Shown here: positions 1,416-46,984 of the stretch, one piece after another
How the letters are laid out: every line of letters starts with the position of its first letter
Numbering within the stretch: position 1 is the first letter of the stretch
Source of the DNA: Camelus dromedarius
Taxonomy: Eukaryota
Length of the DNA stretch: 64,000 bases
Direction of reading: 5' to 3'
Assembly (NCBI RefSeq): GCF_036321535.1
Contig: NC_087452.1
Coordinates: 46,314,001 to 46,378,000 of the forward strand
Translations under genes and position numbers: made by a program
The notes under the pieces: generated by a model
What the model saw: only the letters and a program-made list of their open reading frames with translations
What the model was told of the DNA's origin: nothing
Database searches by the model: none

Positions 1416-2032
1416 TTTCTTTTTTTAAAAAAAATTTTGAGTGAAGTACGGTCAGTTACAATGTGTCAATTTCTGGTGTACAGCACAACGTCCCAGTCTT
1501 GCATATACACACATGTATTTCTTTTCATATTCTTTCCCATTATAGGTTATTACAATATTGAACACAGTTCCCTGTGCTGTACAGTAGAAACCTGTTATTT
1601 TCCCCATAGTATTTAGTATATGAAAATTTCCAACTCCCAATTTATCCTTTTGCACCCCTTCTGGTGACCATAAGTTTGTTTTCTAAATCTGTGAGTCTGT
1701 TTCTGTTTTGTATATAAATTCATTTGTGTCTTTTTTTTAAGATTCCACATGTAAGTGGTATCCTATGGTATTTTTCTCTCTTTCTGGCTTACGATTTCCA
1801 GGTCCATCCATGTTGCTGCATATGGCATTATTTTATTCTTTTTTTTTTTTAAATTGAAGTACAGTCAATTACAATGTGTCAATTTCTGGTGTACAGCACA
1901 ATGTCTCAGTCGTGTGTATACATACATATATTCATTTCCATATTCTTTTCCATTATAGGATACTATAAGGTATTGAATACAATTCCCTGTGCTGTACAGT
2001 ATAAACTTGTTGTTTATCTGTTTTATATATAG
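1416..2032 (-). mobile_element. Two adjacent 5'-truncated L1 3'-UTR fragments (~1416-1840 and ~1841-2032) in intron 2, sense to TGFBR2
   Basis: Each begins with a T tract and TTGAAGTAC(A/G)GTCA..TTACAATGTGTCAATTTCTGGTGTACAGCAC, a cetartiodactyl-type L1 3' end. Confidence 0.85.
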
Positions 2033-2412
2033 TATAATATAAATTATGTTATGTGTGGTGTGTGTGTCTGTGTGTGTGTGGTGAGATGGGGGGATCGGGG
2101 AGGGAGAGAGAGAGACAGGAGGGAAGGGAAGAAGGACTAAGATAAAGACATGGCTCTGCTCCCAGAGAAAGATGCAGCAGGCAGCCCATTGGAGGTTGAT
2201 GTCTCGGCCAAGGCTTCTAAGGAACAGGTCGTCGTCTGATTCCCTTTTATGACAAGGGCTTCCCTCTCCTCACAGCCCACCTGTCATTTCCATGCAAGGG
2301 GACTGAGTTTGCCTCTGAAGAACAAAGCTCCTGGCATCACTGCCAGCTCCCAAAGGGTGTCAATGACTAGGAAGTGGCACATCCTGATCCTTGACACAGT
2401 TTCTATTGTAAC

Positions 2413-5310: not shown

Positions 5311-7639
5311 TGGAGACAGTGTGAAACAACATCACTGGCACAAAGTAAACAACAAAAAATCGCCCTCCCTCCCCCCCCGGGCGCTGCATGCACAAACACA
5401 CAGATGACTTATGGGACAGTGACGGGGTAGCCCCCCAGTCAAGCTGGGAGACGTCTCCTTGTGAAGGACATGCACCTCAAGCCATGTGATGTGTGCTCTG
5501 ACACCGCAGATGGAAAGGAGCTTCCCTGGGCTGGCAGATCCTCTTCTAACAGAAGCTAAAAACAAAGTGTGAGAAAAGGAGTGGAGTCAGGAGTGACGGG
5601 AGAGGGAAAAGACAGCTGTGACGGGGGCTGGACGCGGTGTGGCAGCCACAGATGTGTTGACGAGTGTAAGTGCTTTAGATCTGATGCCTGCAAAACCCAA
5701 TCAGGGAAGACACAAAAAAGATAGCCAAACAGAAAAAAAAAAAAAAAAAGGAAGAAGAAAAAAGGAAGGAAGAAAGAAAGAATAAAGGAAAGAAGAAGAG
5801 AGGGGCCAGCAGGCTACATGATTCCGGGACCCCTCCGATGACCCCTCCGATGGCAGCCGGACACACGGGTGCACAGCCTTGCTGCCCGACGGTGAGGCTG
5901 GAGCGAGAAATCGCTCCACCAGATTCTGGGGAAAAGGCAAAAGGCCAACTTCACTTCATAGTTGAAGGCACAGGCATGTGGAGAGAGGAGGCGGCGTGCA
6001 ACGGGAGCGTGTACATATTAAGCACCCACTGTATGCAAGTTAACTCAGCCAGGGGGGCCTCATTTTTTCCTTCGTTAAAGCAAAAACTACCACAGCCAAG
6101 GTGAGCAAACTTTTGCGCTTGATCAGCTCTTTAATTTGAATTTGAAAAATTCAAAAGCCTTTACACAGGCTTACACTCCCATTCCCCCAGCCCCGCCAGC
6201 CACTCCCTGCGAGCTGACCTCAGGAGGCTCCCCACCTGGTCAATTTTGCCAGCAACTCACATCCCTCCGCTTGAGGCCAGTGCTGTCCTCGGCGAACACG
6301 TGCATTGGTGGGAAAGCCCCCTCCACCTTTGTTGGGGAGGGGTCACCTAATTCTGATAAAAGCGTTCTGAGCCCCCTCTAGGGTGAGGGGCAGAGAGAAA
6401 TGCATACACACCTGTGCTCATCCTTCCAGCGGGCTGGCTCACAGATTCCCTGATGGGCCCCTGAGCCCCAGGTGAAGAATCCCATCGCAGAGCCCACTGA
6501 GGACCTGCAGGACAGCTCTCACCTGATCAGAGTGGGGCGCAGGGCCGGCCAGCGGGGCGGAGGGTGGAGATGGTCATTCATTCCATGTACAACTGCCTCT
6601 GTGCAGCCCCAGAGGTTACTGTCGTGATCTCAAGAAGCAAACAACACTTATGTCTCACACTTAATGCTTGTGAGGTCAAAGGAGTGAAGATACGTGTGCC
6701 TAGTCAGGGATGAAGTTGTTACTTCAAGCAACAACACAGCGAAAGCCTCCTGATTAACTCTACAGCAAACCCTACCGACTTGCAAATTCCTTCCAGTGCT
6801 GGTCTGAGAACGCTGCTCCCCAGTGTCTTCAGTTAAGATCCTCTCATATGAAGGTGTATTTTACGACCTAGGGACCCTCTGGGAGCAGCCCACTGCCTCA
6901 GGATTTTCTCCCCAGAGTAGGTACATTAGCTCGTCATCACGTGCTCCAGAATGAGACGCTCTCTCGCCTAGAAAGCCAGCCGGCGAAGGAAGTGGGCAGG
7001 GACTGCCTGTTCTCATTCCGCATATGACAGGGTCATGTGGCCCATCACACTTCCTTCTCTTCAAACAGACCCAGGGTAAGAGCAAGCCCTTCAGTCTAAA
7101 TCATACCGCCTTCCTCATTTGAGGGCTCGTTTCCCCCAAACTCGCTGCCTAGAGACAGGTCCCAGGTCTTGAGAAGATGAACCAAGGATGTGTTCAGTTG
7201 TGTCTATTTCTGGAACAGGGCTGTCGCCCTTGAAAGTCAATGAGGAGCAGCCGAGTAAGGTTCAGCCTTACTCCAGATAAATCGGACGGATCTTGCATGC
7301 AGCTTGTCAGTCCGTACCTTTGGAGTGGTGTCTACATGAGCTGAACTATTAGGTGAAACCTCAAAATTCCAGAAATAGCCCCAGACACTTTGCCAGGAAT
7401 GCACTGGCCTGTCTTTGAATTCACGCATCCATCTACCGTCACTGTGTGGTACGTTTCGGGGGCACTTAGGACTGCATTTATTCCACAAAAGCCTGTGGAT
7501 GTCTTGCTTATAGTGCGATGTCCTTCACAGCAGGATCCTTAAAGCTGATATAACCAAGTGCAGCATCTCAAAGAGGAACGCATGGCGACTGGTGGACAGA
7601 ACTCACTGGGACTCAGGACACGGCTCCTTGGACATTAAC

Positions 7640-25052: not shown

Positions 25053-27441
25053 TCTTGAACTATCATTCTTAATTGGAAAAATAAACAGTTAAAAAAAGAA
25101 AAGATTTAAAAACTGTGCTGATAACTGAAATAGAGAACATTTTGCAGGTGTGCTGACTCCACAGACAGCAAGGAGGACTCATCATTTCGAGGTGGGGCGC
25201 TGCCTTGGAAAAAAGGCCAGGAATCCAAACATGGTGAGTGTCTGATACCAACCATAACTGGTTGCAAATAAGATGTCAGTCATGGAAGTGGCCCAAAGGT
25301 AAAAACGTGCTTTCTGGGAGCGAAAGCAAACAGACCAAAGACCACATTGTAGGCCCAGTGATTTCCAGTCTCTGACCCCGACAAAATCAGCAGTGATTTG
25401 GGGAAAGAAGTTTTATCTGTCTGACACTTTTAACAACATTGAGTCTTCAACAAGAATCTCTTGTGAGGCGTCTGCAAAGTAAAAGCCATATTTTTCAGAT
25501 CTGAAGAGTTTTCAGACATTACAGTTCTCCCCCAAAGAATAATTACTTAATTTGGGGCACTTAGGAAGAGTGAACCTACTGAGTCAAAAACAAAAACTAA
25601 AAAACTTTTAAGTCTGTGTCGTAGTGAAGTTTGCTCTTACACTCAAATCCTTTGCCCACGTGTCAATATACTAAACTAAATGGAAGATGGGTTTTTTAGG
25701 TAATGTAAGAGGTGGCTGTAAACAATCCTATTTCCTCTTACCTTATCACACATTAGTTCAACCATTTTGAGGCTTTAATTCCATAAAAATATGAGATCTG
25801 TGGGTTTTGTAGCACTGTTTAAAAGCCTAAATAAAAAGCCACTTGGCCTTTAAGCTAATTGTTTAAAAGTGTGTGTGTAGATGAACTGAAACTGAACTAC
25901 TGAGTCTGGAATTTGCAACTCATAAATCTTATCCTTGTAAACAAAACCTAACAAAATCAGGGCCCACTAATTTCCTTCTTTCGTAATCTGAAACAAAAGT
26001 TGTAATGATTTTTAATGTACACAAAACTAAGGGTTTTTTTTTAACCCTTGCTTATTTATTAGCAAACTCTAACTCCGTTTTTAAGAGTTTGGGATATAGA
26101 GACAGTTGAACATTCTGGTACTGCAATGTAAGAAAACATCCAAGAAGGAAAAAAGAAAAGAAAACATTCAAGAAGGACACAGTGGGATTTTATTCAACTG
26201 AAGGACTCAAATTTGTGTTAGGATTTTTTGTTTACAAGAACGTTTCTTCCTCATTCCATTAAAAACGTCCATCTCCATGTCCCCTTCAACATAAAACATG
26301 ATTTTAAAAAGCTCTCAGTCCACTTCAAGTACTCCGAAAGGTCCCATGGGGAACATGATGCCTATTTCTTCTAGACAAAAACCAAAGGTAAGTCTGCCCA
26401 CGGCCCTCCAATGATGTGGGCTCTCAGAGACTCCTCCTTTCATCGCAAATCCTCTCCAAGTCACCAAAGGGGAGGAGAGGGGCAGAAGATGTCAAAGACG
26501 AAGGGAATGTAAACTTATCCATATCTCACCACATCATCCCACAGATGAGGAGACTGAGGCCCAGCACCGTCCAAACACTCAAGTTACCAGACCCCAGAGG
26601 CAAATACTCAGTTATGCAGATCAGAGCTGCAAAATTTCTTTCAAGGTCTCAGGGGTTCAATACGTTCCATAACAAATCCTTAAGAGCTGAATTCCTGCCT
26701 TTTCCCCTCTCAAAACCCTCTAAAGGTCAAGATCAGGTGGGCAGGGGAGCCACGGTTTTAACCCTTCCGTTTCCACCACACATGCCTGCAGAGACCCTTC
26801 CAGGCCGGAAGGCGGGGTTGTCCTGCTCCAGGCAATCGTGCCCGGGACCTGGCACCTGGCACCTAGCGGGCACTCAGTAAATACTCCGCTTCCACCTGAC
26901 AAGCCCCACTCCCTGCTCCATCCACGCCAGTCGGCAGCGGAGCCAGACAACTTTCCTTTGGAAGTCGCTGCTTTTCTTGAAACTTTGGTACAGTAACTCC
27001 GGGCCAAGTCGCTGGCTCGGGGAGGCCTGTGGCCCTCGGCAGGAGCTGAGGAAGGGGTCCCCTGCCATTTCGGGGCGGCTGGGCCATCCCGGGTGGGGAC
27101 CCAGGTGTGCCCGCCGCTTGGAGGCCGCTCGGGCCGCGGCTCCTGCCTGCGCGGATCACCAACTTCTCAAACTTCCCTTTCCGGGGGTGGGGGTGCCCGG
27201 GACGCGGCGGGCACTGCGCCTTTCCTGCCCGCGCAAAGGGGGCCCCGCGCCCCCGGCCACTCTCCCGGAGACCTGCAAAGAAAAACGCACCCGTCCCCGC
27301 GTGGGGCAGGGGGCGCCGGGGCGCGGGCCGCGGGGCCACGTCCCGGCTTCCGCCCGCGCCCGCCGCCGGGGCCGACTGTCAGCGCAAGCCCGGCCGGGAC
27401 CCGCGGACCCCGGCGCCGCGCCGGGGCTGGGGGCCACTCAC

Positions 27442-27535
27442 CCGACTTGGGAACGTGCGGCGGGATGGTGCTGGCGATGCGCGTCCACAGGACGACGTGC
27501 AGCAGCCACAGGCCCCCGAGCAGCCCCCGGCCCAT
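27442..27535 (-). CDS. TGFBR2: TGFBR2 exon 1 coding part (94 nt; signal peptide, M1-S31)
   Basis: Strong Kozak CTGCCATGG at 27535; [31 protein letters not shown]; donor TCGG|GTGAGT at 27441. Confidence 0.98.
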
Positions 27536-27754
27536 GGCAGCCCCCGCCGCTCGGCATAGACCGGCCCGCGCGCGCCCGCGGCGCCTCCGCGCCGCGCCCT
27601 GGGGACCCCGCGCCGGGCGCCGGGCAGCGGTGCGGCCAGATGTGGCGCCGGCCGGCCGCGCGGAGGGGCCCCGGCGGCCGAGGGGAGCTGCGCGGGAGGC
27701 CGGCCCGGGCCCGGCGGGTGCGCGCGCGGCGTGTCGTCGGTCCCGGCGCGCGAG

Positions 27755-27761
27755 TGACTCA
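27755..27761. promoter_or_regulatory. AP-1 site TGACTCA in the 5' leader
   Basis: Perfect heptamer within the block GTGAGTCACTCGCGCG. Confidence 0.6.
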
Positions 27762-27779
27762 CGACTTCACCCGGGCGCC

Positions 27780-27802
27780 GCGGGGGAAACAGGAAACTCC
27801 TC
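27780..27802 (-). promoter_or_regulatory. Tandem ETS (GGAA) element, equivalent to PRE2 of the human TGFBR2 promoter
   Basis: Minus strand GAGGAGTTTCCTGTTTCCCCCGC, with GGAA cores at 27785-27788 and 27792-27795; matches the recalled human PRE2. Confidence 0.8.
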
Positions 27803-27827
27803 GCCAACAGCTGGGCAGGACCTCTCG

Positions 27828-27834
27828 CCGCCCC
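27828..27834 (-). promoter_or_regulatory. Proximal GC box (Sp1/KLF)
   Basis: GGGGCGG on the minus strand about 20-25 bp upstream of the inferred TSS. Confidence 0.6.
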
Positions 27835-27885
27835 GGAGCCTTCTCCCTGGGCTCGGCTCCCAGCCCTCGCCCTCCCTCGCAGCTG

Positions 27886-27890
27886 CCAAT
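27886..27890 (+). promoter_or_regulatory. Inverted CCAAT box (NF-Y)
   Basis: TGCCAATCA; ATTGG on the gene strand about 80 bp upstream of the inferred TSS, as in the human promoter. Confidence 0.75.
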
Positions 27891-27951
27891 CACGTCCCCG
27901 GGACCGGCCCCCCTCCGAGGACGGCGCTGGCAAACTTTCAGCGGCCCCTCG

Positions 27952-27957
27952 CCGCCC
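27952..27957 (-). promoter_or_regulatory. Distal GC box (Sp1)
   Basis: GGGCGG on the minus strand about 145 bp upstream of the inferred TSS. Confidence 0.55.
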
Positions 27958-28294
27958 TCGCGAGTTCCTGACTGTTTCCTGAGCGGAGGACGAAGCGCAC
28001 GCGTTTGAGAAAGTCACCGAACCCCTGAACGTAGAAAGTGGCCGCGCTTGCCCCCGCACCCAAAGCAGCACCCTCCCTCTCCCCCTCCCTCCCGCGTATT
28101 CTTAGCGCCTCACGGCAGTGTTGGCAAACGCCAAGTGGCGAGCCAAGCGTGGAGATGCTAAAACCTGAGTCGTGGGCTCGTTTTTTTCAAATAAAACGGT
28201 AAGTATTGCCCGCTTAAATCTTGGTTTCGGTTGTCCACACACACACACACCCTGTCCCCGCGGTGAAATGTTTTTCTTACTGGAGGTGGAAATC

Positions 28295-44846: not shown

Positions 44847-45034
44847 GCTGTAACAGATTATCCATGTTTATCAGACATTTTGCTAGCAGCTAAGTGCTTT
44901 TTAAACTCAGTAGAGAAAGAGATTGTTCTTCAAGTACAGAGATGCTCTGACAGAGGGAGGTGGTCATTCTAAGAACTGGCAGCTTTGACCTGCCCTTCAA
45001 CCTTAAGAGGTAACCCAGGAAGCATCCCCGTGAG

Positions 45035-45040
<6 letters not shown>

Positions 45041-45074
<34 letters not shown>
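45041..45074. repeat. (GT)17 microsatellite at the L1 tail
   Basis: Direct read; lies inside the L1 TSD pair. Confidence 0.95.
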
Positions 45075-45076
<2 letters not shown>

Positions 45077-45444
45077 TTATTGAAGTATAGTCAGTTTACA
45101 GTGTTGATCAATTTCTGGTGCTTAATGCTTCAGTCATGCATGAACATACGTATATTTGCCTTCATGTTCTTTTTCATTACAGGTTACTACAAGATATTAA
45201 ATATAGTCCCCTGTGCTATACAGTATGAACTTGTTGTTTATCTATTTTATATATAGTAGTTAGTATCTGCAAATCCTGAACTCCCAATTTATCTCTTCCC
45301 ACCCCCACCCCCCACTGGTAACCGTAAGTTTGCTTTCTATGCCTGTGAGTGTTTCTGCTTTATAAATAAGTTCGTTTGTCTTTTTTTTAGATTTGGCATA
45401 TGAGTGATATCATATGGTATTTTTCTTTCTGTCTGGCTAACTTC

Positions 45445-45601
45445 NNNNNNNNNNNNNNNNNNNNNNNNNNNNNNNNNNNNNNNNNNNNNNNNNNNNNNNN
45501 NNNNNNNNNNNNNNNNNNNNNNNNNNNNNNNNNNNNNNNNNNNNNNNNNNNNNNNNNNNNNNNNNNNNNNNNNNNNNNNNNNNNNNNNNNNNNNNNNNNN
45601 N
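45445..45601. other. N-gap (157 nt) within L1
   Basis: Run of N. Confidence 1.
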
Positions 45602-45821
45602 NTATAAATAGTGCTACTATGAACATTGGGGTGCATGTGTCTTTTTGAATTAGGATTCCCTCAGGATATATGCCCAGGAATGGGATTGCTGGATCATAGG
45701 GTAAGTCTATATTGTATTTTTTGAGGAATCTCAATACTGTTTTCCATGATGGCCAAACTGCATTCTCACCAGCAGTGTAGGAGGGTTCCCTTTTCTCCAC
45801 ACCCTCTCCAGCATTTATTGT

Positions 45822-45974
45822 NNNNNNNNNNNNNNNNNNNNNNNNNNNNNNNNNNNNNNNNNNNNNNNNNNNNNNNNNNNNNNNNNNNNNNNNNNNNNNN
45901 NNNNNNNNNNNNNNNNNNNNNNNNNNNNNNNNNNNNNNNNNNNNNNNNNNNNNNNNNNNNNNNNNNNNNNNNNN
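45822..45974. other. N-gap (153 nt) within L1
   Basis: Run of N. Confidence 1.
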
Positions 45975-46320
45975 ATCTTCGGCTCATTTTTGGATTGGGT
46001 TGTTTGTTTTTTTCTTATTAAGTTGTATGAGCTCTTTATATATTCTGGAAATTAAGCCCCTGTCAGTCTCATCTTTTGCAAAAATTTTCTCCCATTCCGT
46101 AGGTTGTCGTTTTGTTTTGCTTATGGTTTCCTTTGCAAAAGCTTTCCTTTGTGCAAAAGCTTGTAAGTTTAATTAGGTCCTATTTGTTTATTTTTGCTTT
46201 TATTTCTATTGCCTGGGGAGACTTCCCTGGGAGAACATGGCTGAGATGTATGTTGGATAATGCTTTGCCTATGCTTTCTTCTAGGAGGTTTATAGTGTTT
46301 TTTCTTATGTTTAAGTCTCT

Positions 46321-46671
46321 TTTTGTGCATATATATTTTTATTGAAGTATAGTCAGTTTACAATGTTGTATCAGTTTCTGGTGTACAACGTAATGTTTTG
46401 GTCATACATGAACATACATATATTTGTTTTCATATCCTTTTTCACTGTAAGTTGCTACAAGATACTGAATATAGTTCCCTGTGCTATACAGTATGAACTT
46501 GTTGTTTATCAGATTTTGTGAGAATCCTCCTGCATTTTGAAGCGAGAAACACTCTGCCAGAGTTCAGTAGGTGTTCTGTGCGATTCAGTGGGTTTGTAGA
46601 TGCAATTCTTGGTGTGTTTGTGGGAGAGGGTGAGCTGGGAGTCTCTCTACTCCGCCGTCTTGGCACTTCCC
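46321..46671 (-). mobile_element. L1 mini-element: 162-nt L1 5' end fused to 189-nt L1 3' end, nested in the older L1
   Basis: TSD TGTTTAAGTCT (46308-46318 / 46672-46682). Starts GGGAAGTGCCAAGACGGCGGAGTAG (YY1-site-like), ends AATAAA plus A-rich tail. Confidence 0.8.
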
Positions 46672-46984
46672 TGTTTAAGTCTTTAAGTCGCTCCGGAGCT
46701 GTTGACAACTAGCCCACCTGTCTCCTCCAGCGTAATTCAACAGAAGTCCTCCTGGTTCCCTCCTGGGAAGAACTACAAAGTTAACAGAAATATTCTTGTG
46801 AGAATTTCACTGCTGTTTCGGGGGACTTGTAACTAATCAGGACAAACCCGATTTCAGTCTAACCAGCTGTTCAAGGCCATTGTCTGTTCTGATTAGCCAT
46901 AGCCCCAGCCATCTCATTAGTGGATATTTTATATAACCAGTGTTTTTATTGAATTCTTGTGGCCAACAGCAGTATTTGGCTGCT

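What the first reader, a model, noticed from the sequence alone, without database searches (positions are those of the whole stretch)
46308..46682. 351-bp 'mini-L1': L1 promoter end spliced to L1 3' end and retrotransposed as a SINE-like unit
Seen: an 11-bp TSD (TGTTTAAGTCT) at a perfect endonuclease site (TT|AAAG on the element strand) encloses 162 nt beginning GGGAAGTGCCAAGACGGCGGAGTAG...ACAGAACACCTACTGAAC, fused at 46510/46509 to 189 nt of L1 3' UTR with AATAAA and an A-rich tail. In the neighbouring L1 copy (~45235-45250) the same 3' sequence is preceded by AG (AAATAG|ATAAACAAC), so the join falls exactly on an acceptor-like AG. In recalled cetartiodactyl L1 5' UTRs the corresponding position is followed by (G)GTAGG. 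Established: spliced L1 RNAs can be retrotransposed (SpIREs in primates). Inference: one splice removed both ORFs but kept the internal promoter start (YY1-like site, here AAGACGGCGG) and the poly(A) signal. That is the recipe for a non-autonomous L1-derived family, possibly undescribed in camelids.
Basis: partly seen in the sequence, partly recalled or inferred. Interest (0 to 1): 0.7.

Follow-up and report, generated by a model that had tools for sequence, protein, structure and literature searches.

The report
Camel mini-L1: head joined to tail
A 353-base retrotransposed copy of a camel LINE-1 RNA keeps only the first 162 bases and the last ~175 bases plus tail, and the same head-to-tail junction occurs in many other places in camel genomes, so it is a recurrent ORF-less L1 derivative, probably made by splicing.

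Summary
An 11-bp duplication (46308-46318 and 46672-46682) encloses a 353-nt minus-strand insert. It consists of 162 nt that begin like an L1 5' end, joined at 46510/46509 to the last ~175 nt of an L1 3'UTR, then AATAAA and a short impure A-rich tail. It sits inside an older 5'-truncated L1.

The junction is not unique. In Logan contigs of three Camelus runs, sequence crossing the junction sums to roughly 220-310 single-copy equivalents, about 40-45% of the depth just 5' of it. The junction bases vary among copies as a decaying CpG would. The tool warns that summed depth is not a copy number.

This scan noted the same kind of element before on other DNA of this genome: s1-196093 and s1-175443 (same size) and s1-203877 (616 bp). 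None has been followed up.

The acceptor side looks like a real 3' splice site. In the host L1, AG lies directly before the joined sequence, and a TACTAAC motif lies 18 nt upstream with no AG between them. The donor (GT after 5'UTR nt 162) could not be tested because no full-length camel L1 was reachable.

Verdict: a recurrent ORF-less L1 head-tail retrocopy, probably a 5'UTR-to-3'UTR splice product mobilised in trans. Whether it propagates itself is open. Bipartite ORF-less derivatives are reported for RTE, Ingi, Vingi, R2 and CR1, and I found no report for L1.

The parts
46672..46682 (-). Target-site duplication, copy upstream of the element (AGACTTAAACA on the element strand). It is preceded by TTAA, so the likely nick is TT|AAAG.
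46510..46671 (-). Head: 162 nt that begin at the 5' terminus of a repeated element and resemble the start of an L1 5'UTR.
   Evidence: Unique in the window. Depth in Camelus contigs is hundreds to thousands of times single-copy. Several contigs end their match at about 46664 and continue into other flanks. One contig continues differently beyond 46510. No tRNA or Rfam match.
46652..46663 (-). YY1-like box CCAAGACGGCGG. Most other copies read T instead of C at 46657, giving AAGATGGCGG.
   Evidence: table 3, place 46657. That this is a YY1 motif rests on established knowledge of L1 promoters, not on a test here.
46509..46510 (-). Head/tail junction, ...AAAATCTG|ATAAACAAC. The G at 46510 fits both parents. 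Other copies vary here as a decaying CpG would (CCG, CTG, CCA/CTA).
   Evidence: table 3 (46510 C>T, 46511 A>G) and table 7 (L1 tails become loose ends exactly at 46510).
46336..46509 (-). Tail: the last ~174 nt of an L1 3'UTR, including AATAAA at 46343..46338.
   Evidence: Very high depth.
46319..46335 (-). Short impure A-rich tail (TATATATGCACAAAAAG). Other copies carry plain poly(A) from 46336.
   Evidence: table 7 (loose ends before 46336 are a T run on the + strand).
46308..46318 (-). Target-site duplication, copy downstream of the element.
45040..46307 (-). Host: an older 5'-truncated L1 (ORF2 3' part, 3'UTR, AATAAA, (CA)n tail) into which the mini-L1 inserted. Its first bases lie at 46683-46690. 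N runs at 45445-45602 and 45822-45974 were left untouched.
   Evidence: 45603-45800 matches human L1 ORF2p residues 1150-1202, E 3e-12.
45242..45265 (-). In the host L1: TACTAAC (45265..45259), then 16 nt without any AG, then AG (45243-45242), directly before the sequence that starts the mini-L1 tail. This is a candidate 3' splice site.
   Evidence: The loose-end consensus of Camelus L1 tails shows a TACTAAC/TACAAAC mixture.

Best explanation
This is a retrotransposed DNA copy of an L1 RNA that lacks everything between nt 162 of the 5'UTR and the last ~175 nt of the 3'UTR. The RNA began at the L1's own start site and ended at the L1 poly(A) signal. Having no ORFs, it must have been copied into the genome in trans by L1 ORF1p/ORF2p through target-primed reverse transcription at a TT|AAAG site, which left an 11-13 bp duplication. 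The internal join was most likely made by the spliceosome, from a donor after 5'UTR nt 162 to a cryptic acceptor in the 3'UTR (TACTAAC, then 16 nt, then AG). The same join recurs in many other loci of Camelus genomes, roughly 200-300 by summed depth. Shown here: the structure, the TPRT hallmarks, the multi-copy status, the acceptor context and the L1 identity of the tail. Inferred: splicing as the origin, L1 identity of the head, transcription from the head, and trans-mobilisation.
For: Exact 11-bp duplication found only at the two ends. The host sequence is continuous across the empty site and is L1 ORF2. The tail is homologous to three L1 3'UTRs from exactly ATAAACAAC onward. L1-tail contigs lose their match exactly at 46510, and the continuing sequence is the L1 3'UTR upstream of the AG (table 7). 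Depth covering 46510/46511 inside alignments is 1954-2232 (X1), 5522-6277 (X2) and 2296-2644 (X13), against single-copy contigs of 8.7, 20 and 10.6. That is 37-47% of the adjacent 5' bins. Between 13 and 30 distinct contigs per run carry CpG-decay variants at the two junction bases (table 3). A 133-nt contig at 90% identity spans 46480-46612 (table 8). Eight sense-strand RNA reads cross the junction and carry other copies' alleles (X24). Three further mini-L1 notes exist in about 34 Mb of this genome. The AG and the TACTAAC 18 nt upstream, with no intervening AG, are in the host L1.
Against: The donor GT was never seen, because no full-length camel L1 5'UTR could be obtained. The polypyrimidine tract before the AG is poor (CTACTATATATAAAATAG). 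The branch motif is TACAAAC in part of the L1 tails. The tool states that summed contig depth is not a copy number. The best-listed bridging contig has only 30 nt on the tail side, one short of the tool's own criterion. RNA reads across the junction may come from DNA copies rather than from fresh splicing. L1 identity of the head rests on recalled similarity to L1 5' ends and on its behaviour as a repeat terminus, not on an alignment made here.
Confidence: 0.6

Rival explanations
1. Single non-splice founder followed by amplification. One L1 copy lost its interior by a DNA deletion or by a reverse-transcriptase jump. It kept enough promoter and the 3' end, and then multiplied as a short internally deleted element. 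The AG at the breakpoint would be a coincidence.
For: All copies seem to share one junction. Bipartite non-autonomous LINEs in other clades arose by internal deletion (PMC5786205, PMC6740152). One base (G at 46510) is shared by both parents, and both sides carry an AAAAT-like stretch.
Against: The AG sits exactly at the breakpoint and a perfect TACTAAC lies at branch-site distance with no AG between. That is unlikely for a random deletion: about 1 in 16 for the AG alone. The AAAAT similarity is not used in the join.
Confidence: 0.25
2. Independent template-switch chimeras of the U6/L1 type. During TPRT the enzyme repeatedly jumped from an L1 tail onto a short 5' L1 RNA.
For: L1 chimeras formed by template switching are known (bioRxiv 10.1101/2025.02.02.635956). 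One TSD pair encloses both parts.
Against: Independent jumps would give variable breakpoints in the L1 tail. Here many contigs share the same junction, and the other notes describe the same size.
Confidence: 0.04
3. A local event only: a full-length L1 inserted here and was later deleted in place, or the junction is an assembly artefact.
For: None beyond the fact that this window has only one copy of the head.
Against: The junction is found in other sequence contexts and in RNA reads carrying other alleles. Fourteen DNA runs under four organism labels hold 80-84% of the locus words. The contigs covering the 5' boundary are identical in three runs (table 8).
Confidence: 0.02

Closest known systems
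SpIREs (spliced integrated retrotransposed elements) of human L1 (Larson et al. 2018, PMC5860796)
   Same: A retrotransposed copy of an internally spliced L1 RNA. The donor lies in the 5'UTR, the TPRT hallmarks are present, and the same junction recurs at many loci.
   Different: Human SpIREs splice within the 5'UTR or into ORF1 and keep ORF2. This element skips both ORFs and lands in the 3'UTR, so it depends wholly on trans-complementation. Its abundance relative to copies carrying the head is far higher. The donor was not verified here.
Bipartite ORF-absent non-autonomous LINEs / SIDEs (RIME, NARTc, R2 SIDEs, RTE-N elements, Persaeus)
   Same: They consist only of the 5' and 3' ends of the parent LINE, have no ORF, occur in many copies, and are presumed to be Pol II transcribed and mobilised by the parent.
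   Different: They are reported for RTE, Ingi, Vingi, R2 and CR1, and I found no report for the L1 clade. Self-propagation of the camel element is not shown.
HAL1 (half-L1)
   Same: An L1-derived non-autonomous family in mammals.
   Different: HAL1 keeps ORF1. This element has no ORF longer than 74 codons, and that one is fortuitous.
SINEs and processed pseudogenes
   Same: Short, polyadenylated, mobilised in trans by L1, and flanked by TSDs.
   Different: There is no small-RNA-derived Pol III head. Unlike a processed pseudogene, the source is the L1 transcript itself, and the copy carries the start of the L1 internal promoter.

Membership tests
SpIRE-type spliced L1 retrocopy | The 3' breakpoint coincides with an acceptor AG in unspliced L1. 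| tested here: met
   AG at 45243-45242 in the host L1, directly before ATAAACAAC. L1-tail contigs diverge from the element exactly at 46510.
SpIRE-type spliced L1 retrocopy | The 5' breakpoint coincides with a donor GT in unspliced L1. | not testable with these tools
   No full-length camel L1 5'UTR is in the window or in any searchable collection. The loose ends on that side were not among the rows shown.
SpIRE-type spliced L1 retrocopy | TPRT hallmarks: TSD, endonuclease-type site, poly(A) signal and tail. | tested here: met
   11-bp exact TSD, TT|AAAG site, AATAAA, short A-rich tail.
SpIRE-type spliced L1 retrocopy | The same junction occurs at independent loci. | tested here: met
   13-30 distinct variant-bearing contigs per run cross the junction, and depth sums to about 220-310 single-copy equivalents. 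Notes s1-196093 and s1-175443 describe the same size.
Bipartite ORF-absent non-autonomous LINE (SIDE) | Only the 5' and 3' ends of the parent LINE, with no ORF. | tested here: met
   162-nt head plus ~175-nt tail. No meaningful ORF.
Bipartite ORF-absent non-autonomous LINE (SIDE) | Copies descend from non-autonomous masters, shown by their own diagnostic substitutions or subfamilies. | not testable with these tools
   This needs the individual genomic copies. Only pooled contig statistics were available.
SINE | Head derived from tRNA, 7SL, 5S or snRNA with an internal Pol III promoter. | tested here: not met
   No Rfam hit at E<=1 and no tRNA in 46250-46750.
HAL1 | Retains an ORF1-like coding region. 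| tested here: not met
   The element is 353 nt and holds no L1 coding sequence.
Template-switch L1 chimera (U6/L1 type) | Variable breakpoint in the L1 part, with the 5' partner copied to its own 3' end. | tested here: not met
   The junction is fixed across many contigs.

The most novel reading that the evidence does not exclude
The mini-L1 is a self-propagating, ORF-less bipartite derivative of L1. It would be born by one 5'UTR-to-3'UTR splice, transcribed from the retained first 162 nt of the L1 promoter, and amplified in trans to a few hundred copies in camelids. The held papers list no lineage-specific SINE for camelids beyond MIR. As far as I could find, this would be the first such family reported for the L1 clade.
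Probability: 0.3. Interest if true: 0.75.

Novelty: new variant of a known kind. Interest (0 to 1): 0.55.

Why it matters
L1 proteins strongly prefer the RNA that encoded them, and human spliced L1 copies are regarded as dead ends (PMC5860796). An ORF-less L1 head-tail RNA that reached a few hundred insertions would show one of two things. Either a 5'UTR-to-3'UTR splice isoform was a major L1 RNA species in the camelid germ line, or a minimal L1 unit (promoter start plus poly(A) end) can parasitise its parent as a SINE does. Either outcome bears on what the minimal cis requirements for L1-mediated mobilisation are. It also bears on why bipartite non-autonomous derivatives are reported for RTE, Ingi, Vingi, R2 and CR1 but not for L1 (PMC5786205, PMC6740152). 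In practice, such copies will be annotated as two unrelated L1 fragments unless they are recognised as a unit.

Tried and rejected
**Searching for a full-length camel L1 5'UTR, to read the bases after the breakpoint:**
- blastn of the head against the window found only itself.
- Exact scans for CAGGAGGATTCTCACAAAATC in metagenome, genome and viral contigs found nothing.
- Scans for the YY1-box start of the element in metagenome and genome contigs found nothing.
- A scan for the L1 tail core in viral contigs found nothing.
- A word search with the translated head, meant to reach gene calls on other copies, found no candidates.
- These collections evidently hold no camel L1, so the blanks say nothing about the element.
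- The single read-laying run listed only the best-supported loose ends, all on the tail side. The continuation of head-bearing contigs past 46510 was therefore not printed.

**Other checks that led nowhere or were rejected:**
- Pfam gave nothing for two short host ORF2 pieces. PDB phmmer did identify L1 ORF2p.
- MAFFT aligned AGGATTCTCACA of the head with AGGATTTGCAGA of the L1 3'UTR. I rejected this as chance, because L1-tail contigs stop matching at 46510 and depth falls about 40-fold there.
- The camel TE paper (PMC8605555) has no supplements held as text and does not mention such elements.
- Bao & Jurka 2010 on HAL1 is not held.

Full report
**What is in the sequence**

On the minus strand, the 11-mer AGACTTAAACA occurs at 46682..46672 and again at 46318..46308, and nowhere else in the 64-kb window (0.05 expected by chance). 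Between the two copies lie 353 nt (46671..46319).

- The first 162 nt begin GGGAAGTGCCAAGACGGCGGAGTAG and have no other copy in the window.
- The remaining 191 nt start ATAAACAACAAG. They match the 3' ends of three other L1 copies in the window from exactly that base onward: 45241-45076 at 85%, 2017-1846 at 78%, and 1600-1434 at 75%.
- AATAAA lies at 46343..46338. It is followed by a short, impure tail, TATATATGCACAAAAAG.
- Upstream of the 5' duplication the element strand reads TTAA. A nick at TT|AAAG (CTTT|AA on the other strand) would give a 13-nt duplication with one mismatch.

**Surroundings**

The insert sits in an older L1 on the same strand.

- The piece 45603-45800 translates to a match with human L1 ORF2p residues 1150-1202 (E 3e-12).
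- That L1 runs on through a 3'UTR to AATAAA and a (CA)n tail at about 45075-45040.
- Its 5' truncation point is only about 8 nt upstream of the mini-L1's duplication. Beyond 46690 the sequence is non-repetitive.
- It appears to have its own degraded duplication, AACAGCTCCGGAG at 46703..46691 against AACAGCTCACGGGG at 45039..45026.
- Its two N runs (45445-45602 and 45822-45974) were left as they are.
The element lies about 19 kb upstream of the GC-rich first exon region near 27,500 and is intergenic.

**Is the head an L1 5' end?**

It is not a small-RNA-derived SINE head: there is no Rfam hit at E<=1 and no tRNA.

In Logan contigs of three Camelus runs the head behaves as the terminus of a repeat.
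- Depth over 46518-46670 is 2,600-62,000 in X1, against 8.7 for the single-copy flank.
- Several contigs of 1.6-2 kb match the head up to about 46664 and then continue into other flanking DNA (records 2, 12, 14, 21).
- One 442-nt contig matches 46510-46634 and then runs on for 317 nt unlike the element (record 3), as a full-length L1 would.

The resemblance of the first ~40 nt to the L1 start with its YY1 box is from established knowledge, not from an alignment made here. At 46657 about 97% of the depth from other copies reads the base that makes AAGATGGCGG; this copy has AAGACGGCGG.

**Is the junction recurrent?**

Yes.
- L1-tail contigs lose their match exactly at 46510 (417-445 contigs per DNA run). 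Their continuation is the L1 3'UTR upstream of the AG.
- Depth then falls about 40-fold.
- The two junction bases are nevertheless covered inside alignments by contigs summing to 1954-2232 (X1), 5522-6277 (X2) and 2296-2644 (X13).
- Dividing by the depth of the locus's own single-copy contig (8.7, 20 and 10.6) gives about 225-257, 276-314 and 217-249 copy-equivalents. This is 37-47% of the depth in the adjacent head bins.
- The tool warns that summed contig depth is not a copy number, so these figures are an order of magnitude only.

Independent of depth:
- 13-30 distinct contigs per run carry variants at 46510 (C>T) or 46511 (A>G). On the element strand this is the pattern of an ancestral CCG decaying to CTG (this copy) or to CCA/CTA, as expected for many separately ageing loci.
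- A 133-nt contig at 90% identity spans 46480-46612. It has only 30 nt on the tail side, one short of the tool's own bridging criterion.

The scan's notebook holds three more first-reader notes of the same kind on other pieces of this genome: s1-196093 (~370 bp, 'at an AG'), s1-175443 (~360 bp) and s1-203877 (616 bp). Two or three same-size copies in about 34 Mb scanned extrapolate to roughly 100-200 genome-wide. That is the same order as the depth estimate. These notes are unchecked leads, not independent proof.

**This copy**

- The 5' boundary with its flank is identical in contigs of three organism labels (records 8, 16, 24). Fourteen DNA runs hold 80-84% of the locus words. The insertion is therefore fixed or common in Camelus.
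- It differs from the majority of other copies at five or more of the 162 head positions. Listed pieces of other copies differ from it by about 10%. The class is therefore not recent.
- In a single-cell RNA run (X24) no read covers the unique flank.
- Reads over the head carry the majority alleles of other copies and are about 8:1 in the sense direction. Eight reads cross the junction.
- So junction-bearing RNA exists, but it may come from DNA copies, and this locus looks silent.

**How the join arose**

In the host L1 the joined sequence is preceded by AG (45243-45242). Eighteen nt upstream of that AG is TACTAAC (45265..45259), a perfect branch-site consensus, and no other AG lies between them. 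The pooled L1-tail consensus shows a mixture of TACTAAC and TACAAAC at that place. The pyrimidine tract is weak.

A random deletion would hit an AG about 1 time in 16, and a strong branch motif at the right distance much less often. I therefore favour splicing at about 0.6.

The other half of the test, GT after the base homologous to 46510 in unspliced L1, could not be run. No full-length camel L1 is in the window, and every collection I could scan returned nothing.

The rivals are these:
- The main rival is a single non-splice deletion or reverse-transcriptase jump in a founder, followed by amplification (0.25).
- Repeated template-switch chimeras would give variable breakpoints, which is not what is seen.
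- An in-place deletion or an assembly artefact is contradicted by the other copies.

**By-product or family?**

The data do not decide this.
- A 353-nt RNA is never 5'-truncated out of recognition, whereas most L1 insertions lose their head. A few hundred mini-copies against tens of thousands of L1 insertions is within reach of trans-mobilisation of an abundant splice isoform.
- Equally, the retained promoter start and poly(A) signal could sustain a lineage of its own.
- Only a tree of the individual copies can tell.

**Comparison with what is known**

- Human SpIREs are retrotransposed spliced L1 RNAs, but they splice within the 5'UTR or into ORF1, keep ORF2, lose promoter strength and are called dead ends (PMC5860796).
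- Bipartite ORF-less non-autonomous LINEs are reported only for RTE, Ingi, Vingi and R2 (PMC5786205) and CR1 (PMC6740152).
- For the L1 clade only HAL1, which keeps ORF1, is listed.
- Full-text searches for non-autonomous or internally deleted L1 families in mammals found none. Repbase and Dfam could not be consulted.
- The camel TE survey lists only MIR among SINEs and does not mention such elements (PMC8605555).

**Verdict**

- It is a new variant of known kinds (SpIRE / bipartite non-autonomous LINE) in the L1 clade of a mammal.
- Interest is moderate.

Noticed in passing
window 45040-46690 (minus strand): The host L1 is 5'-truncated in ORF2 only about 8 nt upstream of the mini-L1 target site. 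It has a (CA)n-modified tail and what looks like its own degraded TSD: AACAGCTCCGGAG at 46703..46691 against AACAGCTCACGGGG at 45039..45026.
   Followed up: partly
window 45259-45265 and the loose ends at 46510: The branch-site-like motif in the L1 3'UTR is TACTAAC in the host L1 and in the pooled consensus of two runs, but TACAAAC in two others. A subfamily change may have strengthened the cryptic acceptor.
   Followed up: no
window 46470 (run X24): 182 RNA reads (agreement 0.88) match the L1 tail down to 46470 and then continue with one specific unrelated sequence. This suggests an abundant transcript that contains part of an L1 tail joined to other sequence.
   Followed up: no
window 46336-46510 (tables 5 and 5c): Several contigs per run show one L1 tail followed directly by a second tail that starts near 46503-46510. 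These are L1 tails 5'-truncated in the A/T-rich stretch and inserted next to an earlier poly(A).
   Followed up: no
window 1434-2060 (minus strand): Two further L1 3' ends lie head to tail. One is a ~200-nt tail-only copy starting about 30 nt upstream of ATAAACAAC, next to a (CA)n-rich stretch. The other belongs to an L1 with its ORF2 end.
   Followed up: no
window 26860-28070: A GC-rich island with an ORF on the minus strand beginning [28 protein letters not shown]. The mini-L1 lies about 19 kb upstream of it.
   Followed up: no
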